Numbered from the stretch's first letter, positions 521 through 63,165 are shown. The stretch: 64,000 bases of DNA from IMGVR_UViG_3300005529_000001:124001-188000; one strand, 5' to 3'. A program made the numbers and translations. The notes: generated by a model not told the origin, from the letters alone.

Positions 521-784
521 TCACTTGTATGCATCGGGGTCAGCACGCATGTCTTGTTTGCACGACTCACACGGGTAACCGCCGGGCGTCGGGGTGCCGC
601 ACCCGTACCCGCCACCCTTGCACGGCTTGAGAGGTAGCTTGGCACGTCGTTCCCGCTCCTCAGCTTCTCGGATGGGTCGCAAACGCTGGTTCTCAAGGTC
701 CTGCATGCGGTACCGTACGAGTTGAAGTTCCTTTGGGTTATCGGTTAGGAACTTGACAACTTCTTGGGGAAGACCACGTGCCAT
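521..784 (-). CDS. hypothetical protein, C-terminal Cys cluster
   Basis: Start MARGLP has TACACT 6 nt upstream; C-terminal Cys residues including CxxC. Confidence 0.6.
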   Translation of the reverse strand: MARGLPQEVVKFLTDNPKELQLVRYRMQDLENQRLRPIREAEERERRAKLPLKPCKGGGYGCGTPTPGGYPCESCKQDMRADPDAYK

Positions 785-840
785 GCAAGCAGTGTACCCT
801 TTTACGTGAGTAGCGTACACTGTGGTCACGGGGTCCTGGA

Positions 841-1152
841 ATGAAAAAGTGGTTCGACCGTGTCCAAATCTGGCTGTACCTTGCGGGCCTTCCCACGATC
901 GCTTCGTGGGTTGGACGTTTTGGGTCTCCTCCCGTGCTCATCGAGCATGATGATGTTCATGAGCGTATCACGCTCCCAGAGATTGGCATTCCCACGGGCC
1001 GTGAGCACCTAGAGGGTGTTGGCTGGCGTTTGGACGAGTTCCCGCCCGAGCCTTTGCGAATTATTGACTTTGACAACACGTTCAACGACAACAGGCTCAT
1101 TGACATGGGCCGGGACGTTGCGCTGCCTCACTCGAAGCTCGACGTCAACTGA
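841..1152 (+). CDS. hypothetical protein
   Basis: Protein-like ORF divergent from 784, upstream of the phosphoesterase. Confidence 0.5.
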   Translation: MKKWFDRVQIWLYLAGLPTIASWVGRFGSPPVLIEHDDVHERITLPEIGIPTGREHLEGVGWRLDEFPPEPLRIIDFDNTFNDNRLIDMGRDVALPHSKLDVN

Positions 1153-1185
1153 ACTACGGACAGCGCGTGGGTTACAATACCCACC

Positions 1186-1959
1186 ATGAGTCGTCTGATT
1201 GTCATTGGTGATTTGCACGGGTGTCTGGCAGAAGCAGAGGAGCTGCTCCAGAAGTGTGACGCCCGTCCCGAGGACCACGTCCTCTTTTTGGGTGACCTCG
1301 TTGACCGTGGGCCCGACAGCGCTGGTTGCGTTGACCTCGCCATGCGCATCGAAGCGCGGCAAAACAAGCGTGCATGCATCCTCGGCAATCACGAAGAAAA
1401 ACACCTTTTCTATGACGACATCGAGCTACGCAAGGGCCACGTGCGTGTTGATGTCGAGACACATATCGAGACCCGCAAGCAGCTGAAGCGTCACCATTAC
1501 GACTACTTCAGGGCGATCCCGAAGTTCTTGCGTTTCCCAGAACACAACCTCGTCGCGGTCCATGCTGGTGTCTACCCTGGTCGCCCGATCGAGAAACAGA
1601 CCGATAGGCACCTGCTCCACATCCAGAGCATCAGGCCGCCCGAGGAGAAATCGATGTGGCCCAGCCGCATCCCACCCAACGAGACGGACTGGCGGTTCTG
1701 GCACCGCTACTGGGACGGGCCCGAACGCATCATCTTCGGTCACAGCGTCCTCAACAAGCCGCTGGTCACCGACAAGGTCATCGGCATCGATGGCGGCGCT
1801 TGTTTCGGCTTGGAGCTGTGGGCGTACGTTTTCCCTGATAATCAGCTCGTCAGCGTCAAGGGCCGTGGCTCACACGATCACAAGGACCTTGACAGGCGCG
1901 GCAACTCAAACAAGAAGCTCTACATCATTGATGAGGACCACGGCGTGGGCACGTACTGA
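1186..1959 (+). CDS. calcineurin-like metallophosphoesterase (ApaH/Ser-Thr phosphatase-like)
   Basis: Motifs GDLHG, LGDLVDRG, GNHE, VHAG, FGHS, IDGG. Confidence 0.9.
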   Translation: MSRLIVIGDLHGCLAEAEELLQKCDARPEDHVLFLGDLVDRGPDSAGCVDLAMRIEARQNKRACILGNHEEKHLFYDDIELRKGHVRVDVETHIETRKQLKRHHYDYFRAIPKFLRFPEHNLVAVHAGVYPGRPIEKQTDRHLLHIQSIRPPEEKSMWPSRIPPNETDWRFWHRYWDGPERIIFGHSVLNKPLVTDKVIGIDGGACFGLELWAYVFPDNQLVSVKGRGSHDHKDLDRRGNSNKKLYIIDEDHGVGTY

Positions 1960-2135
1960 TGAGCCAGTCCGACCGTGCCAAGAAGAAGGCGAAGGCGACG
2001 ACTAGCGATGGGTGGAACCGCGACCGGATGAATGAGACGCACCGGAAGGGCAAGCGCAAGGCAAAGAAACAAGTCAGTCGGGCTCGCCGACGCATCCCCA
2101 TTGAGGAGAGCGATGTCTCACAAGGTCCTGTTTAA
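1959..2135 (+). CDS. small basic protein (58 aa)
   Basis: Own translation MSQSDRAKKKAK...; start overlaps upstream stop. Confidence 0.45.
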   Translation: MSQSDRAKKKAKATTSDGWNRDRMNETHRKGKRKAKKQVSRARRRIPIEESDVSQGPV

Positions 2136-2346
2136 AGTCCCCAACCCGTTTCGCAAGACTTACCCGGGCCAAGCTAGCAAGCCGTGCTTCGTCTGGTTGA
2201 CACGTGAAGACCAGTATTGCGACGGCCGGAACGAAAACGCTCCGATCGGTTCTCACTACCTGTTGATGCTATATGGGCTTGACGGCCGTGTCAAGCTTCA
2301 CTATGAGCTCAACGTTTTGAACAGGATGCACGGACAACGAGGCTGA
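2113..2346 (+). CDS. hypothetical protein
   Basis: GAGGAG before MSHKVLF. Confidence 0.5.
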   Translation: MSHKVLFKVPNPFRKTYPGQASKPCFVWLTREDQYCDGRNENAPIGSHYLLMLYGLDGRVKLHYELNVLNRMHGQRG

Positions 2347-2769
2347 TCAGGTGCCCTCACGGCTGGTGTCGATGTTCTTTGACATCCACTCGTTCTCACG
2401 CTGCCAGGCATCCTTTGCGTTCTGGATGTCTTCTTCGTCTGCCATTCCGACGAAGTCCTCAGCCTTCCACACGTCGAAGCGACGTTGGCTTGAGTGACCA
2501 CCAAAACCGACGCTGATTGTCACATAGGGTTCCTGGTCCTTGTTATGAACGACGGTGAATTCCTTGATCTCACCAGCATGGGGCTTGCCTCGTCCTGAAC
2601 CGCGAAACCGTTCAGCGGGAGCAACCATGACCCAATCGCCCACCTTCAGCCCGTCATGCTCTGAGAGCTTCTCGTAGTGAGGCAGGCCCCGAGCGAAAGC
2701 TGCTTGCTTTGGATCTGTCGGAGCTGCTTCGCGAAGAGCGAGCCGGATCTTGCCTAATGTCGTTTTCAT
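2347..2769 (-). CDS. hypothetical protein with N-terminal leader and KOW/SH3-like segment
   Basis: MKTTLGKIRLALREA leader; LKVGDWVMV. Confidence 0.7.
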   Translation of the reverse strand: MKTTLGKIRLALREAAPTDPKQAAFARGLPHYEKLSEHDGLKVGDWVMVAPAERFRGSGRGKPHAGEIKEFTVVHNKDQEPYVTISVGFGGHSSQRRFDVWKAEDFVGMADEEDIQNAKDAWQRENEWMSKNIDTSREGT

Positions 2770-2788
2770 GTGTCCATCCTACCACGAA

Positions 2789-2998
2789 TCAATGTTTTTG
2801 TGAACTGGTAAGCAACGGCAACCAGACTGACTTGATGTCACGTGCAACCATCACGCCCGTGATGACAGCGATAGCACCTGAGGCTACGGGAACCAGCAGT
2901 GGTAGCTTGGTGAAGAAAAAGGTGAACAGACACGTTGCTGTCATGCTCACAAACACGATCCAACTGAACGTAGGACCAATGAGTTTTGTGGCGATCAT
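2789..2998 (-). CDS. small two-TM membrane protein
   Basis: GAGGAGG 5 nt before MIATKL; two hydrophobic stretches. Confidence 0.55.
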   Translation of the reverse strand: MIATKLIGPTFSWIVFVSMTATCLFTFFFTKLPLLVPVASGAIAVITGVMVARDIKSVWLPLLTSSQKH

Positions 2999-3188: not shown

Positions 3189-3358
3189 GTCGAGTAACTA
3201 TCGACCTCATGGTCTCGGTGGAGAAACCAAAAGACCGCACAGAACATCGAGATGAGGACTATGGCACCGGGGACGTTTTGTTGTCCGATCAGGCCATGAC
3301 AGCACATGCCGACAACAACGGCGATGACCCACAACGAGTAGGCTGCGGTTTTTGCCAT
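3185..3358 (-). CDS. small membrane protein (57 aa)
   Basis: Own translation MAKTAAYSLWVIAVVVG...; TAATGT 6 nt upstream; ATGA overlap with 3188. Confidence 0.55.
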   Translation of the reverse strand: MAKTAAYSLWVIAVVVGMCCHGLIGQQNVPGAIVLISMFCAVFWFLHRDHEVDSYST

Positions 3359-3364
3359 GATCGT

Positions 3365-3394
3365 ACATTATCAAGCACGATCACATCGTTTCAC
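3365..3394 (-). promoter_or_regulatory. putative promoter GTGAAA-N18-TAATGT, leaderless
   Basis: -10-like hexamer 6 nt before ATG 3358. Confidence 0.55.
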
Positions 3395-3664
3395 TCAGCG
3401 ACGCCAGGTGACTCGACCCTTGGTCAAATCGTAGGGAGAGACTTCGATGGTGACATTGTCACCGGGTAACAGACGGATGCGATTGATCCGCAGCTTGCCC
3501 GACAACGTGCACACGACCGTGTTGCCCGCCTCACACTTCACCCTGAAGAGCGTTCCCGGTAGGGCTTCCTCAACCCGTCCTTGAAGTTCCAGTCGGTCCT
3601 GCCGTTCCTCCGGCTCGGTCTGAAACTCTTGCTCCTGCCTGCCCCTTCTCTTGTTCTTGCTCAT
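3395..3664 (-). CDS. infA: translation initiation factor IF-1
   Basis: S1/OB signature G.V.EALPG..FRV....G..V.C.LSGK.R.N.IR.LPGD.V.IEVSPYDLTKGR.TWR. Confidence 0.92.
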   Translation of the reverse strand: MSKNKRRGRQEQEFQTEPEERQDRLELQGRVEEALPGTLFRVKCEAGNTVVCTLSGKLRINRIRLLPGDNVTIEVSPYDLTKGRVTWRR

Positions 3665-6117: not shown

Positions 6118-6886
6118 GAAGTTGTCGCCAGTGTTCAGGCATGAGCTGAACCTCGCCCACCGCATATGGATCCCCGAATTGGTTTGACTGTTTATCGATA
6201 TTAGCGAACACATCAATAACAGACTGACGATCAGCGATGTTTAACCGGGCTGAATGACGACGGAAATACTCGTCAACATCGAGACACCAACCGTGAAGTA
6301 ACGACAGTGTTGGGTCAATTGGCTCATTGACTTGTTTGATACCATTCAAGTAAAAGTTATGGAAGCCCCTCTGGTACGTCATTGGCACTTTTGTCACCAG
6401 TGTCTTGTCATACATGGGTAGCCTCCACATCGACCGTCTGTCAACAAGGAGTTGAGCGCCTGGCGTCCGTGACAGCATCGCTTCACCCGGTTGTTGTACC
6501 ACATTCCACCCAACTGCACGTCTCCACTGGTCTTTTGACTTCAGGAAACGCTCACAATAGTCTCGCAAGTTAACGTACTTGGCATTGGGGATCAGGAACT
6601 CGTCGGTCTCGGCAAAGACAACGACGGGGTAGCGTTGGAGCAACTCACGTTGCATTTGCTCAACAACCTGTTTCAAAAACAGACTGACGTGAGTTCCACG
6701 TGACGGCACACACACAAAATTGACCCGAGGGTGAAGCAATCGTGCTTCTTCCACGCTCCCATCATCAGTTGAGTTATCGATCACATAGACGTCTTCAGGC
6801 GGAAAATTGCTGGTGTAGTAATTCAGCCACGTCCGGAGAAACAACGGCTCGTTTCGTGTGATGGTAAAAGCAGCGAAGTCTCCCAT
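6107..6886 (-). CDS. GT-A glycosyltransferase (Glyco_tranf_2_4/GT92-like)
   Basis: ITRNE..FL..WLNYY, VIDNSTDDGS, FAETDEFL. Confidence 0.75.
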   Translation of the reverse strand: MGDFAAFTITRNEPLFLRTWLNYYTSNFPPEDVYVIDNSTDDGSVEEARLLHPRVNFVCVPSRGTHVSLFLKQVVEQMQRELLQRYPVVVFAETDEFLIPNAKYVNLRDYCERFLKSKDQWRRAVGWNVVQQPGEAMLSRTPGAQLLVDRRSMWRLPMYDKTLVTKVPMTYQRGFHNFYLNGIKQVNEPIDPTLSLLHGWCLDVDEYFRRHSARLNIADRQSVIDVFANIDKQSNQFGDPYAVGEVQLMPEHWRQLLTY

Positions 6887-6923
6887 GTGTAGATTCTACT
6901 CTTCCATGATTTAAAGTGTTGCT

Positions 6924-7268
6924 ATGTGGACTGACCGCCCCCGGATGTGGACTGATGGGCTTGTCATGGCGACCCTAGTGGGTCTCCTCCTGATCATGAT
7001 AGTTAGCATCGGGTTTGAAACTAGTTCAGTTCCCATTTCAATCCCACAGTGCCAGGAAGTCGTCGTGACAATTCACCAAGGTGAGGAAACACTGGCAACA
7101 TGCCCCGCAGGGACATGGCTGGATATCATGGATGACAATGTCGTTTGCAGGTGCTCTCCCCAAGACCGTCACCAGCCCGTACCCAAGTTCATCACCCCTC
7201 CCTCGACCACACAAATACCGAAGGCAACTCCCCCGCAAAGAGACGACAAGGGCGGGATCGAGATCTGA
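6924..7268 (+). CDS. membrane-anchored/secreted protein
   Basis: N-terminal TM helix, Cys residues, Pro/Thr tail; TAAAGT 6 nt upstream. Confidence 0.55.
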   Translation: MWTDRPRMWTDGLVMATLVGLLLIMIVSIGFETSSVPISIPQCQEVVVTIHQGEETLATCPAGTWLDIMDDNVVCRCSPQDRHQPVPKFITPPSTTQIPKATPPQRDDKGGIEI

Positions 7269-9915: not shown

Positions 9916-11548
9916 GCTCCTTGCTGGGCTCATCAAAGATGACAGCGTCCAGCGACAGGAACGTCGTTGCCACGCTGGCGGCGTGCTTCAAAGCTGACCG
10001 GGTCACCTTCACGGGATCGATCACGCCCGCCTTGACGAGGTCCTCGTACTCTCCTGTCGCTGCGTTGTAGCCCAGCTCGTCACCCGCCGCGAGCTCGTGC
10101 TTCTTGTGTTCGAGCTCAGTGAGAATGACGCCGGGAGTTGCACCTGAGTTGCTGACGATCTTGTGCAGCGGGCCGAGGCAGGCCCGGAAGACCGCGTTGG
10201 CTGCCTGGACCTCTTCGGGGTCAACACCCTCAGCCTTGCCAACCTGGCCCTTGACGGCATTGACAGTGTTGAACAGGGCCATGCCGCCGCCGGGGACGAT
10301 CCCCTCTTCCGCGGCCGCTTTGGTCGCATTGAGAGCGTCTTCGATCCTGAACTTCCGCTCTTGCATCTCGATCTCGGTCGCGCCGCCGACGCGGATCACC
10401 GCGACTCCGTTGGCAAGCTTCGCTGCTCTGACACGAAGCTTCGTCAGCTCGTCTTGGGACAACGAGATGTCAGCCATCTGCGTCCGGATCTCTTCGACCC
10501 GAGCCTTGACAGCGTCCTTGGTCTTGCCGGGTCCCACCAACGTTGTCACCTTGGCGTCGGACACCACCTTTGACAGGCTGCCCAGATATTTGCTCTCGAA
10601 CTTGTCAAGCGATGCACCCGTTGCGCTGGAGATCAGCGTGGCCCCCGTCAACACGCAGATGTCTGCTAACAGGTCCTGACGGTGCTGGCCGTAACCGGGA
10701 GCCTTGACGCAAACAACCGGGAGCTTGTTCTGGACACGGTTGATGACGAGACCCGTCATCGCGTCTCCCTCGAAATCCTCCGCAATGAGGAGCAGAGGAG
10801 ACCGGACTTTCATGACCAGCTCTAGGATTGGCATGATGTCCTTGAAGCTTGAGATCTTCTTGTCGGTGATGAGGACCGTCGCGTTCTCATAGACCGCACG
10901 CATCCTCTCGGGATCGGTAACGAAGTACGGAGACACGTACCCGCGGTCAAGCTGCATGCCCTCGACCACCTCCATCGTTGTCTGCATGCCCTTGGCATCT
11001 TCGACAGTGATGACACCGTCACGTCCGACCTGTGCCATCGCATCAGCGATCTGCCTGCCGATGGTCTTGTCACCGTTAGCGCTGATGGTCCCGACCTGAG
11101 CGATCTCGTCGTCAGTCGTCACGGGCTTGGCGTGAGCTCTCAACCCCTCCAAGATCAGGTCAACGGTAGCATTGATGCCTCGGCAAACCGCCAATGGCGA
11201 TGCGCCAGCCTCGACAAGCTTCATCCCTTCCTTGACAAGGGCTTGTGTCAGGACGCTCGCTGTCGTCGTCCCATCACCAGCCACGTCGTTGGTCTGGCTT
11301 GCAGCTTCCCTGACAAGGTCAGCGCCCATCCGAGCGACGGGATCGCTGAGCTTGATCGATTTCGATACCGTCACCCCATCCTTCGTGACAAGGGGTGCCA
11401 TGCCCTGGCGCTGGATGAGGACCGTCTTGCCCCTGGGGCCCAGGGTGCAGCCGATTGCGTCAGCGGCCTTGTTGAGGCCCTCCATCAGCTTTTTACGAGC
11501 TTCGCTACTGAAGATGATCTGCGTTGTTGATTCGCCGGGTAGGTTCAT
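9899..11548 (-). CDS. groEL: chaperonin GroEL
   Basis: TLGPRG, TKDGVTV, AGDGTTT, GANGD-like TISANGD, EGMQLDRGY.SPYF, GGATEIE, IVPGGG, GVIDP.KV. Confidence 0.97.
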   Translation of the reverse strand: MNLPGESTTQIIFSSEARKKLMEGLNKAADAIGCTLGPRGKTVLIQRQGMAPLVTKDGVTVSKSIKLSDPVARMGADLVREAASQTNDVAGDGTTTASVLTQALVKEGMKLVEAGASPLAVCRGINATVDLILEGLRAHAKPVTTDDEIAQVGTISANGDKTIGRQIADAMAQVGRDGVITVEDAKGMQTTMEVVEGMQLDRGYVSPYFVTDPERMRAVYENATVLITDKKISSFKDIMPILELVMKVRSPLLLIAEDFEGDAMTGLVINRVQNKLPVVCVKAPGYGQHRQDLLADICVLTGATLISSATGASLDKFESKYLGSLSKVVSDAKVTTLVGPGKTKDAVKARVEEIRTQMADISLSQDELTKLRVRAAKLANGVAVIRVGGATEIEMQERKFRIEDALNATKAAAEEGIVPGGGMALFNTVNAVKGQVGKAEGVDPEEVQAANAVFRACLGPLHKIVSNSGATPGVILTELEHKKHELAAGDELGYNAATGEYEDLVKAGVIDPVKVTRSALKHAASVATTFLSLDAVIFDEPSKEHASEQ

Positions 11549-11554
11549 GCCCAG

Positions 11555-11584
11555 ATTCTATACCTGGGCAGATCACCTGTTCAG
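11555..11584 (-). promoter_or_regulatory. putative promoter CTGAAC-N18-TAGAAT, leaderless groEL
   Basis: TAGAAT 6 nt before ATG 11548; no SD. Confidence 0.55.
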
Positions 11585-11772
11585 GTGTCAAACAAGATGC
11601 CCAACGTCTGGTTGACTTCTTCCTGCTCCGCAGCAGTGAGGGACTCCGATAGCTTGATGATCTCTTCGTGAATCTTGGCGAATTTGACAGCCCTCGGCGT
11701 TCCCGGGAAAGCTGGACACAGCTCTGTCAGCTCCTTGGTCAGCTTCACCAGCTTCTGAGCGTTTGGGCTCAC
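11581..11772 (-). CDS. hypothetical protein
   Basis: GTG start overlapping upstream TGA. Confidence 0.5.
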   Translation of the reverse strand: MSPNAQKLVKLTKELTELCPAFPGTPRAVKFAKIHEEIIKLSESLTAAEQEEVNQTLGILFDT

Positions 11773-22917: not shown

Positions 22918-22954
22918 GTTGTCACCCTAACACAAGAAACGGTGCTTTGACAAC

Positions 22955-25131: not shown

Positions 25132-25179
25132 GATCAAAGTCTACAACCTGGGCCCGAGTTTGTTACTCAGGGTTGTTCA

Positions 25180-36087: not shown

Positions 36088-36118
36088 GCCTAACCCTACA
36101 ACGGGTTGCGCGCTTTTT

Positions 36119-37431: not shown

Positions 37432-37453
37432 GATGCGATCCTACTACACACGT

Positions 37454-37750: not shown

Positions 37751-37782
37751 GCTGCCACCCTACTTTGCGGAGCGCTAAAAGA

Positions 37783-38097: not shown

Positions 38098-38115
38098 GGT
38101 CACATCTTACTTCGA

Positions 38116-39681: not shown

Positions 39682-39702
39682 GCTACCACTGTAACCCAGG
39701 CT

Positions 39703-41292: not shown

Positions 41293-41323
41293 GCTCAACT
41301 CTACACAACATGTGAAGCTAAGT

Positions 41324-42139
41324 TCAGCCGCCAGCGAGTGCGTCGATATACTCGAGAGCCTTCTCGGGCTCATCTCCCAACAAGCGAGGTGTCTTCGTCA
41401 CAAGCTCACGCATCTCACTGGCAAACGTCAGCATGATTTGTGGACCAAGCTTCTTCCAACGTGACCGGAACAGCGCGACAACGACGCCCTCAAACGTCCG
41501 TGTGTCCTGGGCTGACGCTTTCTTGCCAAACACCTTGTGAACGATGGTGTCCGGGTCGCTGCTGACGCGGAAACGACAATTAGTTTTCCAGTCTTTCAGG
41601 ACCCGCCCGTTCTTTCCCCTTTTCGTCTGCTTGACTTCAAACAGTCCCATGTCAAAGTCAATGCACCACCTGTAACGTTCAAGGGGAGAGACGCTGGGCC
41701 ACTTCTCTTCTGAGGCAAAACGGGTTATGACGTTTAGCAACACGTTCCGAGCCACGTTCTTGACGTGGCTGTAATCTGGGTGCTTTGGGTCTTCTGATGT
41801 GCCTGCTCGGGCCCACCGAAGGTATGTTGGATCACCCAGCATGATGTCGACTTGATATCCAGGGTCTTCTGCACCGTAACACACAGACACGATGTTGCCA
41901 CCGACCCGACGGGTGTTATGCTTGCCGAAGTGCTGGGCGATGGCTTCATACGCTTCTTCAGGGGTTCCCTTAAACTTGCAAGCAACATCGATGTCGCCCA
42001 TCAGCTGCTTCTTGCCAGTGGTACCGATTGGCTCTGGATCTGTCAAACCTGCCATCGCTAGATCACGTTGCAGCTGCGGCCACTCCCTCTCAAACATCTC
42101 AAGGGTGATGGGTTCGATGGTGTCAAACCTGTTACACAT
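41324..42139 (-). CDS. Pol-beta-superfamily nucleotidyltransferase
   Basis: IGTTGKK...GDIDV and QVDIM. Confidence 0.75.
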   Translation of the reverse strand: MCNRFDTIEPITLEMFEREWPQLQRDLAMAGLTDPEPIGTTGKKQLMGDIDVACKFKGTPEEAYEAIAQHFGKHNTRRVGGNIVSVCYGAEDPGYQVDIMLGDPTYLRWARAGTSEDPKHPDYSHVKNVARNVLLNVITRFASEEKWPSVSPLERYRWCIDFDMGLFEVKQTKRGKNGRVLKDWKTNCRFRVSSDPDTIVHKVFGKKASAQDTRTFEGVVVALFRSRWKKLGPQIMLTFASEMRELVTKTPRLLGDEPEKALEYIDALAGG

Positions 42140-45089: not shown

Positions 45090-45512
45090 TCACCGTGCGG
45101 GGCGCTTGAGACCAAGGCCCAGGACGCACAGACCGTTCCTGACGTCCAGATGGTCCATCCGTGCCGCCTTGATCAGGAAGGGACCCGGAGCCTTGATGAC
45201 ACGATCGCCATAGTGCAGCTCGTAACCCTGGAAGACAAGCTGTGCCGCTGACACGACATTGAATGCGTCTTCGAGCGTTACCTTGAACTCTAGCTCGGGT
45301 TCGACATCGAACAGGACTGACTGCAGGTGACCGACAACCGCGGTGCCCTTGCCCGAACCAAATTGGATGTTCGCCACGACGGTGACAACGGAACCCTCGA
45401 GCTGGTCAGCTGCTTGGACGATCGCCTCGTCTTCTAGCTCCGCAGGGACCTGGCCCCTGAGGACCTCGCTCATCAGGACTTTAGACGTCTCCGGTTGGAT
45501 CCTCGTCTCCAT
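45090..45512 (-). CDS. hypothetical protein
   Basis: TAGGAT 6 nt upstream. Confidence 0.6.
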   Translation of the reverse strand: METRIQPETSKVLMSEVLRGQVPAELEDEAIVQAADQLEGSVVTVVANIQFGSGKGTAVVGHLQSVLFDVEPELEFKVTLEDAFNVVSAAQLVFQGYELHYGDRVIKAPGPFLIKAARMDHLDVRNGLCVLGLGLKRPAR

Positions 45513-45897
45513 CCTCGAATCCTACAACAACGTTGGGCCTGGAGACGAGGTCTTTGAAGACACAGTCAGCAAACCGAGCGTATTCCTTGTCTAGCTCGGT
45601 CACGCGTTCAGCGGTCTTGGTCTGCACCCTGAGGCTCACTTCGCCCTCATCGATCCTGATCTGCGCGTTGTGCTGGACATCACGCTCGTGGGCTAACAAT
45701 GCGATGACAAACTGGTCACGTTGGTCGCCCTCGCGGAACGTGTAGGTCTTGTAGAGGGCGCCGTCAGCTTCGTGCCACCTGTCCATCGGGATGATGGGCG
45801 CTTGGGGCGTACGCGCTCTGATGGGCAAGCCACCGAGCTGCATCGGGCGCTGCGCTCGTTGGATGAACTGTTCGTTGAGTTGCGTTAGCTTGGTCAT
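45481..45897 (-). CDS. pterin-4-alpha-carbinolamine dehydratase-like protein
   Basis: W......LYKTY.F, QH.A.I.I, V.L...T.....VTELD..YA...D. Confidence 0.75.
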   Translation of the reverse strand: MTKLTQLNEQFIQRAQRPMQLGGLPIRARTPQAPIIPMDRWHEADGALYKTYTFREGDQRDQFVIALLAHERDVQHNAQIRIDEGEVSLRVQTKTAERVTELDKEYARFADCVFKDLVSRPNVVVGFEDGDEDPTGDV

Positions 45898-54689: not shown

Positions 54690-55861
54690 GCCCCCACCAT
54701 GGATTGGAACAACTCGCTCTCAAGGCGATGGATTTCCTGGCCTAGCGCTTTGCCCGAAAACCCCTGTGCCATCAGGGGCTCACCCCTGAAAGGCTCAGAG
54801 CCCAGGTACCGCAAGAAAGCATCGAACTCTGCGTTCGAGGGCATCCCGCGAGCACGAACGTACTCAACGTACATCGTGAAGGCGTCATCTTCTGACATGC
54901 CCAGGGCTTTCTCGGCCTTGCGGAGCTTCAGAGCGGTGTCCTTCGTGATGTTACGGAGCCGGAGCAAGAACGTGACTTGCGCGACCTCGTCAACCGAGTA
55001 CTTCAGGTGAAGCAGCTTTTTCCCCAACGTCTCAAGGTTCTCATCATCCAAGATGAGAGCTAGCACGACCGGGACGGTGTTGGAATCGACCCCACGCGTA
55101 GACACGAGGTTGTCCAGGTACGTTGACACTTTGAGCCCGGGCAGCACCCGATCCCACAACCCCAACGACGTCATGAGGTTCATCAACCGTTGTGGTTTCT
55201 CAGCTGCTACGATCGACTTGACAAGCTCGTCCCGGACCCGTTCAAACGAGACGCCATCAAGGTTGTTGTCACGCTGAATGGCTGCGAACGTTTCTTTGGA
55301 GATCTCAAAGCCGAGCTTGACTGCGAACCTGATGGCTCGCAACACCCTGAGCCTGTCTTCGGCAAACCTGTCCTCGGGACGTCCAACCGTCCTGATGACC
55401 TTGTGACGAATGTCATCGAGCCCGCCGACTAGGTCAACGACCTCTTGCGCGGTGATGTCATAGAACAGAGCGTTGATCGTCAGGTCCCGACGTTGCACGT
55501 CTTCCTTGATCGTCGCGAAGCGTACCTGTGGGTGGCGACCCGCGCTCAGGTCCTCACGGAACGTTGCGATCTCGTACTCCTCGGAAGGAGACCCATCGTG
55601 GGTGTACGTCCTCGTTCGGATGACGCCGAAAGCCTTGCCGACTGCATCCGTTAGCCATCGTCCCGTGGTGTGGAGCAAGCGCTCCACTTGGTCAGGAGTG
55701 GCATCAGTTGCGAGGTCGAAATCCTTGGGCTTCTTGCCCATCACCGCGTCACGCACTGCACCACCGACCAGGTGCAGTGCGTAGCCATTCGTATGAAAGA
55801 GCATCGCCAGCGATTTGACATCGCTGTGCAAGTCAATCTTGAGAGGCTGACGGACTACCAT
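54686..55861 (-). CDS. cca: class II CCA-adding enzyme/tRNA nucleotidyltransferase
   Basis: LVGGAVRD, DFDLAT, EIATFR, DVQRRDLTINAL, EDRLRVLRAIRF, VSFERVRDEL. Confidence 0.9.
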   Translation of the reverse strand: MVVRQPLKIDLHSDVKSLAMLFHTNGYALHLVGGAVRDAVMGKKPKDFDLATDATPDQVERLLHTTGRWLTDAVGKAFGVIRTRTYTHDGSPSEEYEIATFREDLSAGRHPQVRFATIKEDVQRRDLTINALFYDITAQEVVDLVGGLDDIRHKVIRTVGRPEDRFAEDRLRVLRAIRFAVKLGFEISKETFAAIQRDNNLDGVSFERVRDELVKSIVAAEKPQRLMNLMTSLGLWDRVLPGLKVSTYLDNLVSTRGVDSNTVPVVLALILDDENLETLGKKLLHLKYSVDEVAQVTFLLRLRNITKDTALKLRKAEKALGMSEDDAFTMYVEYVRARGMPSNAEFDAFLRYLGSEPFRGEPLMAQGFSGKALGQEIHRLESELFQSMVGA

Positions 55862-55867
55862 GCGGTC

Positions 55868-55897
55868 ATCCTACCATCGTTGGTGGTTGGTTTTCAC
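55868..55897 (-). promoter_or_regulatory. putative promoter GTGAAA-N18-(TGG)TAGGAT, leaderless
   Basis: 6 nt before ATG 55861. Confidence 0.55.
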
Positions 55898-56475
55898 TCT
55901 TTCGCGATGTTCGCTCGTTTGTCAACGGCAAGATGGTGGCGAAAGCAACGCGGCTCATAGAGCTCCGCGCCACCGACCTGGATCTCCTCGCCGTCTGTCT
56001 GTTTCTTGTGAGTGTAGAAAGCGTCACGCCCACATTCAGTGCAGACCGCTGCACATTTTTCGACATGCGTTGCCCAAGCCATCAGCTTCTCGACCTCGTG
56101 GAATGGCTTGCCCAGGTATGACAGGTCCAACGTTGAGACCACGACATCGATGCCGAGCTGGTAAAGGTAGATCAGGACGTCGGCGACGCCCGGGATCATG
56201 AACGCTTCGTCAACGGCAACCACCTCGGGCATCTGTTCCGCTTCCGCAAGCGCGCCCAAGATGTCTGACCCCTCCTTGACAAGGGTAGCATCGTGTTTCC
56301 AGCCCGAGTGACTGACAACCTCAGTGTTGCTGTACCTGGCATCGATCGCGGGCTTGAAGACCTGGATTCGCTTGTGTTGGTACTTGGCACGCTCAAGAGC
56401 GAGCAACAGTTTCGTCGTTTTTGACGAGAACATTGCGCCCGCGAAGACCGTCAGCGTTGGGTTCTGCCCGCTCAT
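55894..56475 (-). CDS. tdk: thymidine kinase (type II)
   Basis: GAMFSSKTT, KP.ID.RY, AVDEA.F, C..CG, YEPRC..H. Confidence 0.93.
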   Translation of the reverse strand: MSGQNPTLTVFAGAMFSSKTTKLLLALERAKYQHKRIQVFKPAIDARYSNTEVVSHSGWKHDATLVKEGSDILGALAEAEQMPEVVAVDEAFMIPGVADVLIYLYQLGIDVVVSTLDLSYLGKPFHEVEKLMAWATHVEKCAAVCTECGRDAFYTHKKQTDGEEIQVGGAELYEPRCFRHHLAVDKRANIAKE

Positions 56476-58553: not shown

Positions 58554-59503
58554 TTGTTAAGCTTCATCTTTCCGACCCAATCCCAGTTGTCTTCGTACCA
58601 TTTGACGGTCCGATCCAGACCCTCCCAGAACCTGACCAGTGGGACATATCCTAACAACTGTTGTGCTTTTGTCACGTCGGCTTGGGTGTGCATGACATCG
58701 CCGGCGCGCCAGGGCGCGTTGCAGACCTGAGCACCTGGATAACGCTTGCCCAGCTCGATGATGATGTCACGGTTAGTCGTTCGGTCTCCACATGCTACGT
58801 TGATGCACTCAGCATTGAGCAAACCTGATACGTTTCCAGCCTTGACACACGCATCGACAACGTTGTCAACGTAACACATGTCGCGGCTCTGGCTGCCGTC
58901 GCCGTCGCTACGAAGAGGGATGCCCTTCTTGATCGCTGTCAACCAGGCTGACACCGCGGTTGAATACGGGCTGTCACCCAGCTGGTTGGGTCCAAAGACA
59001 TTGAAGAAACGCAAACAAACGCTGTCAAGCTTGTAAAGATCGCGGTACAAGACCAGGTAATCTTCAATGATCGACTTCTGAAGAGCATATGGTGACTTGG
59101 GGTTCTTACGCTCGTTCTCGCTGGTGGGTAGTATGTCAGCCCCACCGTATACCGACGAGCTAGACGCGAAAACGAACCGCTTGACGTTGTCCCGACAGGC
59201 ATCCATCAACGCCAACGTCCGGGACACGTTGACGTGGTTGGTTTCTAGCGGGTGCTCGACTGAGTACGACACCCTGGGAACAGCCGCCAAGTGAAAGATG
59301 ACATCGTACCTGCCCTGCTTTATCTCGTGCAATACATCAGCATGAGCAAAATCTTTCGTGATTACCGCCTGGCCATGAGGTACAAACTCCAGGTGACCGT
59401 TGGACAGATCGTCAACAGTGTCAACATCCCACCCTTCGTCCAAGCAACGCTTGACAAGGTTCGATCCGATGAAGCCCGCGCCGCCAGTGACAAGGACGTG
59501 CAT
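58550..59503 (-). CDS. NAD-dependent NDP-sugar epimerase (GalE/WbpP-like)
   Basis: GGAGFIG, FHLAA, ASSSSVYG, YALQK (YxxxK), RFFNVFGP, GDG.QSRD. Confidence 0.93.
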   Translation of the reverse strand: MHVLVTGGAGFIGSNLVKRCLDEGWDVDTVDDLSNGHLEFVPHGQAVITKDFAHADVLHEIKQGRYDVIFHLAAVPRVSYSVEHPLETNHVNVSRTLALMDACRDNVKRFVFASSSSVYGGADILPTSENERKNPKSPYALQKSIIEDYLVLYRDLYKLDSVCLRFFNVFGPNQLGDSPYSTAVSAWLTAIKKGIPLRSDGDGSQSRDMCYVDNVVDACVKAGNVSGLLNAECINVACGDRTTNRDIIIELGKRYPGAQVCNAPWRAGDVMHTQADVTKAQQLLGYVPLVRFWEGLDRTVKWYEDNWDWVGKMKLNK

Positions 59504-59509
59504 GAGCGG

Positions 59510-59515
59510 ATCATA
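59510..59515 (-). promoter_or_regulatory. -10-like TATGAT heading the epimerase-hydroxymethylase operon
   Basis: 6 nt before ATG 59503. Confidence 0.55.
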
Positions 59516-59536
59516 ACCCGCCCGCCGTCCAAAGTT

Positions 59537-60058
59537 TCAGTACCGCGTGGTGTCGACCCAAGCACCGTCGGCAGGAACCCACTGCCACGGTGGCATGTCT
59601 TCCTCTTCGCTTGGTTCACCCTCGGTTGCCATCAGAGCCCAAGGAACACCATCAACAACAATCGATGGGTCATTTTCGTCGACCGCTTCAAGGACGTAAA
59701 AGTACGTGAGATCAGCAGGAGCATCAGCAAGAGCAACAACGGCTTCAGGCACCATCTTTTCTAGCTCTTGAAGGGTGAATGCCTGCATGTGATGCAAGCC
59801 CTCAGACAACACCTTCATGGCATCGTTGACGTAATAGTCGAGGATGTCGGCTTCGACCTTGTTGGATCCTGCTTCCTGGACTGCGCTGCTCCAGCTCGTG
59901 AAGGTAGTGTCCCACCCATCACTGTCATCTGTGAACCGGCGACCGATCTTAGCCTCGACAAGACGTCGAAACTTCCGATGATCATCAATGATCATTTCTT
60001 CATTCAGTGCGCGTTCGATCTCCTCACGCACCAGGGCCCTTAGCGACTTCTCATCCAT
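59537..60058 (-). CDS. acidic protein with N-terminal leader
   Basis: MDEKSLRALVREEIERALNEE; TACTTA 6 nt upstream. Confidence 0.65.
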   Translation of the reverse strand: MDEKSLRALVREEIERALNEEMIIDDHRKFRRLVEAKIGRRFTDDSDGWDTTFTSWSSAVQEAGSNKVEADILDYYVNDAMKVLSEGLHHMQAFTLQELEKMVPEAVVALADAPADLTYFYVLEAVDENDPSIVVDGVPWALMATEGEPSEEEDMPPWQWVPADGAWVDTTRY

Positions 60059-61424: not shown

Positions 61425-61761
61425 GCTTGAACCTTTCCCTGATGTCGGCGTGGTGTTCATCGCAGTGTGCACGTGCCTGCTCAAAAAGCGCAACTAGGAT
61501 GCGACGCAGTTTCCTGTTGTCGTCGAAAGTCAGGTCTTCAATGATTTCCCTGGCGCAGTGCTCAGCCCACTTCTCCTTGTTGAACGTGACCTCACCGTAC
61601 TGATCATCGATCACCCATGACCCGGGCGCTGCGGCTTTTGACCTGAACTTGGTCTTGAAGGTGATGTGACCGCTCGACCAATCCTCGAAGCCAGGAACGC
61701 ACTCCTTTCGAGCGTCGAGCATGTGGAACTCGACGCCCATGATGAAAGCGCTCTTGCTCAT
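61393..61761 (-). CDS. hypothetical protein
   Basis: ATGA overlap with exonuclease stop. Confidence 0.55.
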   Translation of the reverse strand: MSKSAFIMGVEFHMLDARKECVPGFEDWSSGHITFKTKFRSKAAAPGSWVIDDQYGEVTFNKEKWAEHCAREIIEDLTFDDNRKLRRILVALFEQARAHCDEHHADIRERFKHAPASPDSAE

Positions 61762-62321
61762 GTCGTGCTTCGCTTCAGGTTCTGTCTCAGCCACTCGGTA
61801 CACTCCTTACCATGTGCGATGCTCTCGAGAACGTCGTCTTGGGCACGGTGCGCTTGGGCTTTCTTGAGCTGCGGCATTCCCATCGACCGGCAGTACAGTT
61901 TCAGCACCGAGACGTCATAGCACCTGACATCGTTCTCACGGAACTCGAACCGCGTTGCTACCCTAGGCATGTGGACTTTCATGAACTTGTAATCAAAACG
62001 GATGCTAGATCCTCCCATGACGGGTCGTTCGTCTGGGTCACCAACAAGCGGGACAACACGAAGGAGGTCTTCCTCAACGTCCCGTACCTGTTTCGCAAGC
62101 CACGACGAACAGTCAGCAAGCAGACCGTTCTTGGTGTGCATCTCCAAGACGATCGGTCTCAGATCAGATGGAATCCACGGGGCCAACGGCATCACTGCAT
62201 GGTACACGGGCCTGGCGTTGAAGGGGTCGTTGAAGTCCGCGACGGACACCGCGAGCTCCAACGGCTTGTCTTTGTCAGGATCGATGCCCGTTGACTCAAA
62301 GTCAAGCCAGAAGATCTTCAT
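61758..62321 (-). CDS. DEDDh 3'-5' exonuclease (oligoribonuclease-like)
   Basis: WLDFESTG, EMH.KNGL, GSSI.FD..F, DVS, HRA.DD..ES. Confidence 0.9.
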   Translation of the reverse strand: MKIFWLDFESTGIDPDKDKPLELAVSVADFNDPFNARPVYHAVMPLAPWIPSDLRPIVLEMHTKNGLLADCSSWLAKQVRDVEEDLLRVVPLVGDPDERPVMGGSSIRFDYKFMKVHMPRVATRFEFRENDVRCYDVSVLKLYCRSMGMPQLKKAQAHRAQDDVLESIAHGKECTEWLRQNLKRSTT

Positions 62322-62602
62322 GCGTTTCTCAGCGCAGCTGTCAGCAAACCGATCAATGGTCGCAACGTTTGTCCCGTACGCGCTGCCTCTTTCCCACCGC
62401 GACTGAGCAGCGCATCTAAGGATAACGCCATTGCTCGAGCTTCATCGTGGTCGAGCTCAATGGTGACTGTCTTCGCCAACCGCTTGGGATCAGTCTTAGC
62501 GTTCTCCCAGATGCCCAAGCAAGTGGGACACCCATCGGGATACTTCGCTGTCTTCATCGGCATCCGACGTGCCTGGTACTTCGGGTGTTCTTTGCACTTC
62601 AT
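62318..62602 (-). CDS. hypothetical protein
   Basis: C..H...C..C; operon-coupled. Confidence 0.55.
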   Translation of the reverse strand: MKCKEHPKYQARRMPMKTAKYPDGCPTCLGIWENAKTDPKRLAKTVTIELDHDEARAMALSLDALLSRGGKEAARTGQTLRPLIGLLTAALRNA

Positions 62603-63153
62603 CAGACCACCCTGTAGATGAAATAATGAACGTCATCGAGCTCACGTTGGAGGTTCTCATCGTCAACGTTGAGCTTCAGGAGCTTGCATTTGGTCCATGA
62701 CGCAAAGTCCATGTACGCATCATGGATCTGCTGGAGCGTCTCCCCCTTGACGGTTGGGTCAAGATCATCAACGATCTTTGAGTAATCTGTACGGCAAGCA
62801 AGGATGATGCGAGCGTCGAGCTTGGCCCACTCTTCGTCGAGATGCCTCAGCATCCTGTCGTCAGTCACCCGGCCGAACGTCTTGCTGTAAGCATACTCGC
62901 ATGGGTAACCACGATCGAAGATGACAGACTGGCCTGTTTGTTTGAGCAGGTCCATAACCCGGGGGTCAGCATACCGCAGCTGTTCTAGGAACAGCTCACG
63001 TTTCGAGACCCGGCTTGACAAGAAAGCATCGTGCTCGCTCGACGCCTTGAAGTAAGGGATGTCGGTGACCCTGGAGAGGGCCTTGCTTATCTCTGTTTTC
63101 CCAGACATGTCGGGCCCAACGAAGAAAACGATGCGTTGCCGTCCCACGTACAT
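62602..63153 (-). CDS. P-loop nucleoside-monophosphate kinase (thymidylate/dNMP kinase-like)
   Basis: GPDMSGKT, FDR..P.EY.Y. Confidence 0.8.
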   Translation of the reverse strand: MYVGRQRIVFFVGPDMSGKTEISKALSRVTDIPYFKASSEHDAFLSSRVSKRELFLEQLRYADPRVMDLLKQTGQSVIFDRGYPCEYAYSKTFGRVTDDRMLRHLDEEWAKLDARIILACRTDYSKIVDDLDPTVKGETLQQIHDAYMDFASWTKCKLLKLNVDDENLQRELDDVHYFIYRVV

Positions 63154-63159
63154 GGCTCT

Positions 63160-63165
63160 ATCCTA
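63160..63165 (-). promoter_or_regulatory. -10-like TAGGAT heading the kinase-exonuclease-GT operon
   Basis: 6 nt before ATG 63153. Confidence 0.55.

What the first reader, a model, noticed from the sequence alone, without database searches (positions are those of the whole stretch)
784..63165. Pervasive leaderless transcription architecture TANNNT-N6-start
Seen: a -10-like hexamer lies 5-7 nt before the start codon, mostly without a convincing SD, at 22 genes (exactly 6 nt in 19): 784, 1186, 2769, 3358, 6886, 6924, 11548, 22917, 25131, 31913, 34293, 36087, 37431, 37750, 38097, 39681, 41292, 43880, 45512, 55861, 59503, 63153. Several have TGn extensions and a (G/C)TG(A/T)(A/C)(A/C) element 18 nt further up (784 GTGTAC, 1186 and 11548 CTGAAC, 3358 and 55861 GTGAAA, 39681 GTGTCA). 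Established: this spacing puts the TSS on or next to the start codon, as in leaderless mRNAs of Actinobacteria and Deinococcus-Thermus. Inference: operon-head genes are translated leaderless while internal genes use SD or overlap coupling; this also hints at the host type.
Basis: partly seen in the sequence, partly recalled or inferred. Interest (0 to 1): 0.62.

Follow-up and report, generated by a model that had tools for sequence, protein, structure and literature searches.

The report
Leaderless-gene promoters in a giant phage
The window lies in a 369-kb uncultured soil "jumbo" phage in which about a fifth of the genes have a promoter placed so that transcription should begin on the A of the ATG (leaderless mRNA). 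The feature is real and shared by the phage's relatives, but it is a known kind of architecture and does not reveal the host.

Summary
All 22 listed sites carry TANNNT 5-7 nt before ATG or GTG, and 19 have exactly 6 nt. Genome-wide (369,475 bp phage), TANNNT-N6-ATG occurs 155 times against about 62 at other spacings. With an ORF of at least 50 aa it occurs 113 times against about 20.

The motif is a full sigma-70-type promoter: gGTG(A/C)AA (-36..-31), 18 nt, tGn-TAgrnT (-12..-7), N5, C(-1), A(+1)TG. The same promoter also stands before tRNA arrays and before genes with short Shine-Dalgarno (SD) leaders. There it keeps the C/A start-site signature at the same distance.

The peak is specific to ATG. 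It is kept at orthologous genes (92/149 against 13/225). It recurs in 83 related viral contigs with GC of 35-62%.

The other genes use SD or overlap coupling. A second motif, TACTTA, precedes structural genes that have SD leaders.

The "operon head" reading is only partly right, because the promoters sit inside tightly packed arrays with no sign of terminators. The host hint is not supported. The -35 element belongs to the phage clade, which encodes a conserved RpoD-like sigma lacking region 4.2. No RNA data exist, so start sites are inferred.

The parts
782..821 (-). leaderless promoter plus start (A of ATG at 784)
   Evidence: -35 GTGTAC, -10 TACACT, spacer 6, ORF 87 aa, PWM 18.8
1148..1188 (+). 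leaderless promoter plus start (ATG at 1186)
   Evidence: -35 CTGAAC, -10 TACAAT, spacer 7, ORF 257 aa, PWM 13.0
2767..2806 (-). leaderless promoter plus start (2769)
   Evidence: -35 GTTCAC, GTGG-TAGGAT, spacer 6, ORF 140 aa, PWM 20.6
3356..3395 (-). leaderless promoter plus start (3358)
   Evidence: -35 GTGAAA directly after the TGA stop of the phage IF1 gene; -10 TAATGT, spacer 6, ORF 57 aa, PWM 17.2
6884..6923 (-). -10-only candidate leaderless start (6886)
   Evidence: TAGAAT, spacer 6, ORF 259 aa, no -35 match, PWM 0.9
6887..6926 (+). doubtful candidate (ATG at 6924)
   Evidence: TAAAGT, spacer 6, ORF 114 aa, weak coding score 6.3, PWM -7.3
11546..11585 (-). leaderless promoter plus start of the GroEL gene (11548)
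   Evidence: -35 CTGAAC, -10 TAGAAT, spacer 6, 549 aa, Cpn60. The promoter is retained at the ortholog in G003 with a 9-nt spacer.
22915..22954 (-). leaderless promoter plus start (22917)
   Evidence: -35 TTGTCA, GTGT-TAGGGT, spacer 6, ORF 178 aa, PWM 15.9
25129..25168 (-). candidate leaderless start (25131)
   Evidence: TAGACT, spacer 6, ORF 65 aa, weak -35, PWM 5.4
31911..31950 (-). leaderless promoter plus GTG start (31913)
   Evidence: -35 GTGTAA, GTGG-TAGACT, spacer 6, ORF 112 aa, PWM 16.6
34291..34330 (-). candidate leaderless start (34293)
   Evidence: GTGT-TAGGGT, spacer 6, ORF 382 aa, weak -35, PWM 5.5
36085..36123 (-). leaderless promoter plus start (36087)
   Evidence: -35 CTGAAA, -10 TAGGGT, spacer 5, ORF 68 aa, PWM 18.7
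37429..37468 (-). candidate leaderless start (37431)
   Evidence: TAGGAT, spacer 6, ORF 161 aa, PWM 9.9
37748..37787 (-). leaderless promoter plus start (37750)
   Evidence: -35 GTGATC, -10 TAGGGT, spacer 6, ORF 98 aa, PWM 13.4
38095..38134 (-). candidate leaderless start (38097)
   Evidence: TAAGAT, spacer 6, ORF 104 aa, PWM 6.5
39679..39718 (-). leaderless promoter plus start (39681)
   Evidence: -35 GTGTCA, GGGT-TACAGT, spacer 6, ORF 153 aa, PWM 14.8
41290..41328 (-). leaderless promoter plus start (41292)
   Evidence: -35 CTGAAC, TGTG-TAGAGT, spacer 5, ORF 529 aa, PWM 11.8
   Evidence: TACTGT, spacer 6, ORF 99 aa, PWM -1.0
45510..45549 (-). -10-only candidate (45512)
   Evidence: TAGGAT, spacer 6, ORF 140 aa, PWM -1.2
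55859..55898 (-). leaderless promoter plus start of the tRNA nucleotidyltransferase (CCA-adding) gene (55861)
   Evidence: -35 GTGAAA, ATGG-TAGGAT, spacer 6, 391 aa, best PWM in the window at 24.6
59501..59540 (-). -10-only candidate (59503)
   Evidence: TATGAT, spacer 6, ORF 317 aa, PWM 0.7
63151..63190 (-). candidate leaderless start (63153)
   Evidence: AGGT-TAGGAT, spacer 6, ORF 183 aa, PWM 4.6

Best explanation
The window is part of a complete 369,475-bp jumbo phage genome from a soil metagenome. The phage has no recognisable RNA polymerase of its own, so it should be transcribed by the host core enzyme with a sigma-70-family factor.

Its main promoter class has this consensus: gGTG(A/C)AA at -36..-31, an 18-nt spacer ending in (t)G(n), a -10 hexamer TAnnnT (most often TAGGAT or TAGRRT) at -12..-7, five bases, then C(-1) and A(+1).

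At about 100-125 of about 515 genes (20-24%), that A(+1) is the A of an ATG. The mRNA should therefore start with AUG, have no 5' UTR and no SD, and be translated by the leaderless route, in which the ribosome recognises a 5'-terminal AUG.

The same promoter class also drives tRNA arrays and genes with 10-35-nt leaders that contain an SD. Most other genes use GGAG-type SD sites or 4/1-nt overlap coupling. Structural genes tend to follow a second, -35-less motif, (A)TACTTA, with short SD leaders.

Shown here: motif geometry, statistics, strand concordance, and conservation in orthologs and relatives.

Inferred: the start site, leaderless translation, and which sigma reads the promoter.
For: - Spacer peak at 6 nt: 155 against about 62; with an ORF of at least 50 aa, 113 against about 20. 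In 515 called genes: 120 at 6 nt and 47 at 7 nt, against about 20.
- Logo with a -35 element, an extended -10, and C at -1 in 86 of 114 sites.
- TG[AC]A[AC]-N18-TANNNT occurs 104 times against about 20 at other gaps. Fifty of those have ATG exactly 6 nt after the hexamer.
- PWM hits: 148 against about 20 in Markov-shuffled genomes. Hits are co-oriented with genes.
- The same promoter stands before tRNA arrays and SD-leadered genes. Promoters with no start codon at 5-7 nt still show C at position 6 (19/36) and A at position 7 (18/36) after the -10.
- The peak is ATG-specific: GTG 21 against about 17, TTG none.
- Orthologs of leaderless genes keep the arrangement in 92 of 149 cases, against 13 of 225 for other genes.
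- The same two peaks appear in three DnaE-related contigs and in 80 sigma-bearing contigs totalling 1.0 Mb with GC 35-61%.
- Canonical TTGACA/TATAAT is not enriched: 6 against 6.0.
- No RNAP beta, beta-prime or T7-like RNAP was found.
- Non-leaderless genes have an SD peak at -11/-10.
- Published geometry: a -10 box 6-8 nt from the start codon marks leaderless genes (PMC6028130; PMC3160421).
Against: - There are no transcript data. Only three DNA metagenome runs hold the sequence, so no start site is mapped.
- Ten of the 22 window sites lack a convincing -35.
- About 21% of the leaderless candidates carry an SD-like k-mer, mostly the AGGA inside TAGGAT at ideal SD spacing. That could act on read-through transcripts.
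- Start-site choice can vary by 1-2 nt.
- My gene calls are home-made, from ORF length plus codon log-odds.
- The host and its ability to translate leaderless mRNA are unknown.
Confidence: 0.8

Rival explanations
1. The promoters are ordinary host primary-sigma promoters, and the leaderless architecture mirrors a host from a leaderless-rich phylum (Actinobacteria or Deinococcus-Thermus), so it can be used to infer the host.
For: - TAnnnT with a TAGRRT flavour and 6-8-nt spacing is the pattern of GeneMarkS-2 group C genomes, which are 90% of Actinobacteria and 97% of Deinococcus-Thermus.
- The phage sigma operon itself sits behind a promoter of this class, near G000:34912. Something present before phage gene expression must therefore read it.
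- The class is densest among small, early-like genes at 60-90 kb.
- The phage has no RNAP of its own.
Against: - The -35 element GTG(A/C/T)AA is not a described host consensus (own knowledge). It is conserved across related phage contigs with GC of 35-62% from soil and other metagenome samples, which suggests varied hosts.
- It co-occurs in 80 of 80 contigs with a phage sigma and a partner ORF.
- In three MAGs that hold related contigs, the full pattern lies on the phage-like contigs only.
- Thirty-one Bdellovibrionota genomes show no excess. This is a weak test, because that phylum is only a binning-based guess.
- The tmRNA tag starts ANDN, which resembles Proteobacteria rather than actinobacterial tags (own knowledge).
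Confidence: 0.3
2. The promoters are real, but transcription starts a few bases away from the A of ATG. The mRNAs would then carry very short leaders of 1-5 nt rather than being strictly leaderless. Alternatively, most protein could be made from read-through polycistronic transcripts in which the G-rich -10 (TAGGAT or TAGGGT, with AGGA at -11..-8) serves as an SD.
For: - Spacers of 5 and 7 nt also occur.
- The G003 GroEL ortholog has a 9-nt spacer.
- The upstream gene ends 9-37 nt away, and no terminator excess was seen.
- TAG-initial -10 hexamers are commoner at leaderless promoters (44/78) than at other promoters of the class (27/90).
Against: - The peak is sharp at exactly 6 nt and is ATG-specific.
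- C(-1)/A(+1) sits at that exact distance even where there is no start codon.
- Many -10 hexamers have no SD-like core, for example TACAGT, TACACT and TAGACT.
Confidence: 0.12
3. The TANNNT-N6-ATG signal is a translation signal (a non-SD ribosome-binding element) or a by-product of in-frame TAG/TAA stops and gene calling. On this view it is not a promoter.
For: - At 6-nt spacing the hexamer's TAG or TAA is in frame with the ATG, and 64% of leaderless -10 hexamers start with TAG or TAA.
- AGGA occurs at -11 in a subset of sites.
Against: - The hexamer has a fixed-distance -35 partner: 104 at gap 18 against about 20 at other gaps.
- It has an extended -10.
- The same composite motif stands before tRNA genes and 10-35 nt upstream of SD-led genes.
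- In-frame spacings of 3 and 9 nt show no peak.
- The ORF-length test uses only downstream sequence.
Confidence: 0.04

Closest known systems
Leaderless genes of GeneMarkS-2 'group C' bacteria (Actinobacteria, Deinococcus-Thermus): PMC6028130, PMC3160421, PMC4633059
   Same: A -10 box (TAnnnT) sits 6-8 nt before the start codon, so +1 falls on the start codon. About 20-40% of genes or operons are affected. The remaining genes use SD sites at a similar distance.
   Different: Here the genome is a phage. The promoters carry a well-conserved, non-canonical -35 (GTGMAA at an 18-nt gap), whereas mycobacterial promoters mostly lack a -35 (own knowledge). The promoters are packed inside gene arrays, often overlapping the previous gene's stop codon, rather than sitting at operon heads.
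Thermus thermophilus phage phiYS40 (152 kb): most middle and late transcripts are leaderless (reviewed in PMC3594737)
   Same: A large phage that relies on host RNA polymerase and makes many leaderless mRNAs from -10-type promoters.
   Different: In phiYS40 the start sites were mapped experimentally, the host is known, and that host is itself rich in leaderless genes. Here nothing is mapped. The leaderless class looks early/middle rather than late (densest among small genes, sparse in the structural region). The late-like TACTTA class has SD leaders.
Jumbo phages with mapped start sites: phiKZ (PMC8244752) and AR9 (PMC5312081)
   Same: Genome size class, with several promoter classes used in temporal order.
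   Different: phiKZ showed no leaderless transcript, and AR9 has 5' UTRs of 26-491 nt. Both encode their own multisubunit RNAPs. This phage has none detectable and shows a leaderless architecture.
T4 middle promoters (MotA box at -30 plus a sigma-70 -10, 'sigma appropriation') and two-part sigma factors such as B. subtilis SigO-RsoA (own knowledge, not tested)
   Same: A normal TAnnnT -10 is combined with a phage-specific upstream element in place of TTGACA. A sigma-related function could be split over two polypeptides.
   Different: There is no sequence or fold relation to MotA, AsiA or RsoA. The 100-aa partner ORF has no significant fold or profile match.

Membership tests
sigma-70-type (group 1-3) bacterial promoter | -10 hexamer TAnnnT with invariant A(-11) and T(-7) | tested here: met
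   This feature was used as the seed. Independent support comes from the flanking conservation (G-t-G-G before the hexamer, g/G/a inside it) and a PWM giving 148 hits against 20 in the null.
sigma-70-type (group 1-3) bacterial promoter | -35 element at a fixed spacing of 17 +/- 1 bp | tested here: met
   TG[AC]A[AC] lies exactly 18 nt before TANNNT 104 times, against 14-28 at gaps of 14-17 and 19-22. The consensus GTGAAA matches TTGACA at 4 of 6 positions, so it is a variant and not the canonical hexamer.
sigma-70-type (group 1-3) bacterial promoter | extended -10 (TGn) in a subset of promoters | tested here: met
   At -15, T occurs in 45 and G in 38 of 114 sites. At -14, G occurs in 65 of 114. 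The 'tGnTA' form is clearer in the relatives.
sigma-70-type (group 1-3) bacterial promoter | start site about 7 nt after the -10, with purine at +1 and pyrimidine at -1 | tested here: inconclusive
   The sequence signature is present. C(-1) occurs in 86 of 114 sites. At promoters with no start codon, C occurs in 19 of 36 and A in 18 of 36 at the same positions. No 5' ends are mapped because no RNA run holds the sequence.
leaderless mRNA gene (group C-type architecture) | -10 box 6-8 nt upstream of the start codon at many genes, above chance | tested here: met
   The arrangement is conserved at orthologs: 92 of 149 against 13 of 225.
leaderless mRNA gene (group C-type architecture) | 5'-terminal AUG required (strong ATG preference) | tested here: met
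   At 6 nt: ATG 113 against about 20, GTG 21 against about 17, TTG 28 against about 21.
leaderless mRNA gene (group C-type architecture) | transcript 5' end mapped on the start codon and protein made from it | not testable with these tools
   No RNA runs hold the sequence, and the host is uncultured and unknown.
full-length sigma-70 family protein (the phage sigma, G000:33359-34174, minus strand) | regions 2 and 3 present | tested here: met
   Pfam Sigma70_r2 at 3e-22 and Sigma70_r3 at 6.6e-6. It aligns to RpoD and SigA chains at up to 1.7e-44, and the FSTYATWWI(K)QAI motif is kept.
full-length sigma-70 family protein (the phage sigma, G000:33359-34174, minus strand) | region 4.2 helix-turn-helix that reads the -35 | tested here: not met
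   There is no Pfam region 4 hit. The alignment to E. coli RpoD stops at about residue 570-574 of 613. All 29 aligned orthologs end at the same conserved ...G(K)GLT stop.

The most novel reading that the evidence does not exclude
The leaderless promoters may be read by a phage-borne initiation system rather than by the host's housekeeping sigma. That system would be the conserved 271-aa RpoD-like sigma, which lacks region 4.2, working with the co-conserved 100-aa ORF found 200-700 nt downstream in 80 of 80 relatives. That ORF carries a helix-turn-helix-like motif (NYREIAD...SSARNYVLRVMRKF) and would recognise the clade-specific GTGMAA element. If so, a large uncultured jumbo-phage clade (more than 330 IMG/VR contigs) would carry a portable, two-part sigma. 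That sigma would impose leaderless gene expression whatever the host's own habits.
Probability: 0.2. Interest if true: 0.75.

Novelty: new member of a known kind. Interest (0 to 1): 0.48.

Why it matters
- Gene calling. Start-codon and gene calling in this phage clade will be wrong for about a fifth of genes if an SD-only model is used. The consensus given here can fix the starts.
- Contrast with studied jumbo phages. The two jumbo phages with mapped start sites (phiKZ and AR9) have no leaderless transcripts. This clade would show a different expression strategy in giant phages that depend on host RNA polymerase.
- A testable promoter system. A clade-wide non-canonical -35 element occurs together with a sigma that lacks its -35-reading domain. 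This gives a concrete, testable system for phage control of promoter recognition.
- A caution. A leaderless signature in a viral contig should not be used to infer the host.

Tried and rejected
- RNA evidence.
- Close isolates. There is no nucleotide match in GenBank phages. DnaE is at most 30% identical, the sigma at most 40%, and the 100-aa ORF has no match.
- Canonical TTGACA-N16-18-TATAAT scan. No enrichment, 6 against 6.0.
- Phage RNA polymerase. No beta, beta-prime or T7-like hit. The T7-like control rang nowhere, so that one is uninformative.
- Translation-factor genes that might favour leaderless mRNA. IF3, IF2 and S21 are absent. Only IF1 was found.
- The 100-aa ORF as sigma region 4. 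There is only a non-significant profile hit to SigR region 4 (E 0.43). The AF2 model is good (pLDDT 82), but Foldseek PDB gives no match at E <= 0.001 and VIA-align gives only generic helical matches at Z <= 5.8. The idea is left as a lead.
- Complex prediction of the sigma C-terminus with the 100-aa ORF.
- Host from MAGs. Relatives of the 100-aa ORF lie in one 'Paceibacterota' and two 'Bdellovibrionota' MAGs. The promoter pattern is confined to the phage-like contigs, and 31 Bdellovibrionota genomes show no leaderless signature. These are probably binning artefacts, and no host is assigned.
- Stop-codon recoding. Rejected: coding coverage is 88% under table 11, with large intact ORFs.

Full report
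WHAT THE SEQUENCE IS

The window is bases 124,001-188,000 of a single 369,475-bp IMG/VR virus record with direct terminal repeats. CheckV rates it 100% complete, and its GC is 56%. It is a jumbo phage.

- The window encodes a GroEL, a phage-lysozyme endolysin, a tRNA nucleotidyltransferase, a UDP-galactopyranose mutase and an AAA ATPase.
- Elsewhere the genome has a DnaE-type polymerase, a tail sheath, about 55 tRNAs and a tmRNA.
- The only public runs that hold the sequence are DNA metagenomes: one soil run (the likely source) and two mine runs. No RNA run holds it.
- GenBank phages contain nothing close.

CHECKING THE OBSERVATION

All 22 listed positions carry TANNNT followed by 5-7 nt and a start codon. 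Nineteen have 6 nt, one has 7 and two have 5. Twenty-one start with ATG and one with GTG. 43880 should read 43879.

In the window, TANNNT-N6-ATG occurs 20 times against 9.2 +/- 3.0 in dinucleotide shuffles. No shuffle out of 100 reaches 20, and 18 of the 20 are on the gene-bearing minus strand.

Genome-wide, the spacer histogram is flat at about 62 per spacing except at 6 nt, where it is 155. Requiring an ORF of at least 50 aa downstream gives 113 at 6 nt and 38 at 7 nt, against about 20 elsewhere. This test looks only at downstream sequence, so the in-frame TAG of the hexamer cannot bias it.

I called 515 genes from ORF length plus codon log-odds, covering 88% of the genome. Among them, 120 candidate starts have the hexamer at 6 nt and 47 at 7 nt, against about 20 at other spacings. 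After subtracting background, about 100-125 genes (20-24%) have this arrangement.

WHAT THE MOTIF IS

Aligning the 6-nt sites gives a complete promoter:
- g-G-T-G-A-A-A at -37..-31.
- A non-conserved stretch, then G-t-G-G at -16..-13.
- TA-g-g/a-n-T at -12..-7.
- Five variable bases, then C at -1 in 86 of 114 sites.
- Then ATG.

The -35 part is not an artefact of selecting on the ATG. The pentamer TG[AC]A[AC] lies exactly 18 nt before any TANNNT 104 times, against 14-28 at every other gap from 14 to 22. Fifty of those 104 have ATG exactly 6 nt after the hexamer.

A PWM built on this motif finds 148 sites against about 20 in Markov-shuffled genomes. Hits follow the strand of the local genes.

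The remaining promoters of the class sit directly before tRNA arrays (for example at G000:15185 and 39368) or 10-35 nt before genes that have their own GGAG-type SD. The element therefore functions as a promoter whether or not a start codon follows.

At high-scoring promoters with no start codon at 5-7 nt (n = 36), position 6 after the hexamer is C in 19 and position 7 is A in 18. This pyrimidine(-1)/purine(+1) signature at the same distance is independent sequence evidence that +1 is the seventh base after the -10. At the leaderless genes that base is the A of ATG.

The peak is specific to ATG. GTG (21 against about 17) and TTG show none. That fits the known need of leaderless translation for a 5'-terminal AUG (Brock et al. 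2008, cited in PMC5312081).

Canonical TTGACA/TATAAT promoters are not enriched, at 6 against 6.0. No phage RNA polymerase was detected. This class is therefore the phage's main promoter for a host-type core enzyme.

COMPARATIVE SUPPORT

Three contigs with DnaE at 64-89% identity show the same two peaks: the 18-nt gap, and the 6-nt spacer before ORFs of at least 50 aa.

Eighty contigs with an ortholog of the phage sigma (at least 55% identity, 1.0 Mb in all) show them too. In the 80 contigs the counts are 290 against about 115 for the spacer and 361 against about 150 for the gap.

The GC of these relatives ranges from 35 to 62%. The logo is the same in every GC class: gTG(C/A/T)AA ... tGnTAnanT-N5-(C/T)ATG.

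Gene by gene, 92 of 149 N-terminally aligned orthologs of leaderless genes keep TANNNT at 5-7 nt from the aligned start. Only 13 of 225 orthologs of other genes do so. The spacer and flanks have diverged. The arrangement is under selection.

HOW THE REST OF THE GENOME IS EXPRESSED

Non-leaderless genes show an SD k-mer peak at -11/-10, with 39 and 41 occurrences against about 5 expected.

Rough classes of the 515 genes:
- 148 leaderless candidates.
- 234 with an SD, of which 47 also overlap the previous gene.
- 70 with a 4/1-nt overlap only.
- 63 with neither.

A second hexamer, (A)TACTTA, is the most enriched word 14-40 nt upstream of long ORFs, both in this genome (13 against 1.0) and in the relatives (41 against 5.7). 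It has no -35 and is followed by an SD. It is concentrated in the structural region at 200-310 kb, including upstream of the tail sheath gene. It is a candidate late promoter.

The main class is densest at 60-90 kb among small genes and sparse in the structural region. So 'pervasive' holds for one promoter class and not for the whole genome.

1. Operon heads. For most leaderless genes the previous co-directional gene ends 9-37 nt upstream. In 16 of 106 cases its TGA stop is the TGA of GTGAAA. TGA makes up 82% of all stops. No terminator excess was seen on the coding strand. These are internal promoters in dense arrays. Read-through transcripts probably exist, and on those the AGGA of TAGGAT lies at SD distance. 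TAG-initial hexamers are commoner at leaderless promoters (44/78) than at other promoters of the class (27/90). This could reflect a second use as an SD or as an in-frame stop, and it is not resolved.

2. Host type. The phage encodes a 271-aa sigma with RpoD-like regions 1.2-4.1. It lacks region 4.2, and every one of the 29 aligned orthologs stops at the same place. A 100-aa ORF with a helix-turn-helix-like motif lies 200-700 nt downstream in 80 of 80 relatives.
- The clade-wide, non-canonical -35 element travels with these genes.
- In three MAGs that contain related contigs, the full pattern lies only on the phage-like contigs.
- G000 has 48 TGnTAnnnT-N6-ATG sites against 3 in the reversed-pattern control, in 0.37 Mb.
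- Thirty-one Bdellovibrionota genomes are at control level.
- On the other side, the sigma operon is itself behind a main-class promoter with a leader. Some pre-existing holoenzyme must therefore read at least that one.

It could be the host primary sigma, the phage sigma, or the first followed by the second. The architecture cannot be used to name the host.

THE 100-AA ORF

Its AF2 model is confident (pLDDT 82; four helices), but it has no significant fold or profile match. The complex prediction could not be run. The 'two-part sigma' idea is therefore a lead and not a result.

COMPARISON WITH WHAT IS KNOWN

A -10 box 6-8 nt from the start codon is the published mark of leaderless genes in GeneMarkS-2 group C bacteria (PMC6028130). 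The same holds for the 'TA-led' genes of Zheng et al. (PMC3160421).

Thermus phage phiYS40 makes most of its middle and late mRNAs leaderless (PMC3594737).

The jumbo phages with mapped start sites differ. phiKZ has no leaderless transcript, and AR9 has UTRs of 26-491 nt.

This case is therefore a new member of a known kind: a large, uncultured jumbo-phage clade with its own promoter consensus positioned for leaderless expression.

LIMITS

No start site or protein N-terminus is measured. Gene calls are my own. Ten of the 22 window sites rest on the -10 alone, and 6924(+) is doubtful. The host is unknown.

Noticed in passing
window 3398-3664 (-): The phage encodes a translation initiation factor IF1 homolog (Pfam eIF-1a/IF1, 1.3e-23). 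It has an N-terminal extension and is SD-led (GAGGA before the ATG at 3664). Its TGA stop abuts the GTGAAA -35 of the next, leaderless gene at 3358. No IF2, IF3 or S21 was found.
   Followed up: partly
G000:C1:33359-34174 (-) and 32470-32772 (-) (= L001:1060-1875 and 171-473): An RpoD-like sigma has regions 1.2-4.1 but no region 4.2, and all orthologs end at ...GKGLT. A 100-aa ORF with an HTH-like motif (GVNYREIAD..MNHSSARNYVLRVMRKF) is always 200-700 nt downstream, in 80 of 80 related contigs. The ORF between them is variable. The 100-aa ORF has no fold or family match.
   Followed up: partly
window 26264-26269 (-), 63187-63192 (+); genome-wide e.g. G000:247748, 251065, 269683, 279050: A second conserved upstream motif, (A)TACTTA, has no -35. 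It lies 14-40 nt before long ORFs with an SD in between and is concentrated at structural genes. It is enriched 13-fold here and 7-fold in relatives. It is a candidate late promoter.
   Followed up: partly
genome-wide; window examples 11548, 37750, 55861: Signals are packed together. In 16 of 106 leaderless genes, the TGA of the -35 GTGAAA is the stop codon of the previous gene, ending exactly 32 nt before the ATG. TGA is 82% of all stops. The TAG or TAA of the -10 hexamer is an in-frame stop at -12 in 64% of leaderless promoters.
   Followed up: partly
G000:C1:765-39338 (-), 265088-265457 (-), 336639-336792 (+): There are two large tRNA arrays (about 55 tRNAs) driven by the same promoter class. 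They include a tRNA with anticodon CUA (amber-suppressor-like, called 'Pyl' by ARAGORN). Two tandem tRNA-like genes have an 8-nt anticodon loop (ttca). A one-piece tmRNA carries the tag ANDNGFADDVRLAA. No sign of stop-codon recoding was seen in the gene calls.
   Followed up: partly
L123, L124, L125 (MAG contigs JBAYGN010000014.1, CAZPXK010000001.1, JBBAUR010000009.1): Contigs of this phage clade are binned into MAGs labelled Candidatus Paceibacterota and Bdellovibrionota/Bdellovibrionales. Within those MAGs the promoter pattern marks the phage-like contigs (for example G006 C9 and C72). This is probably a binning artefact and not a host assignment.
   Followed up: partly
G003:C1:~25100-25230 (-) against window 11546-11585: The GroEL ortholog in a 47%-GC relative keeps the CTGAAC...TAAAAT promoter, but with 9 nt to the ATG. 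That predicts a leader of about 3 nt instead of none.
   Followed up: no
window 4245-5423 (+): The phage encodes a UDP-galactopyranose mutase (Glf, 5e-74) on the minority plus strand. This is a cell-envelope sugar enzyme that is unusual for a phage.
   Followed up: no
relatives L043-L122: The base at -33 of the -35 element differs by lineage and runs against the compositional trend. It is mostly C (GTGCAA) in low-GC relatives and A/T (GTGAAA or GTGTAA) in high-GC relatives. This suggests a specificity difference rather than drift.
   Followed up: no
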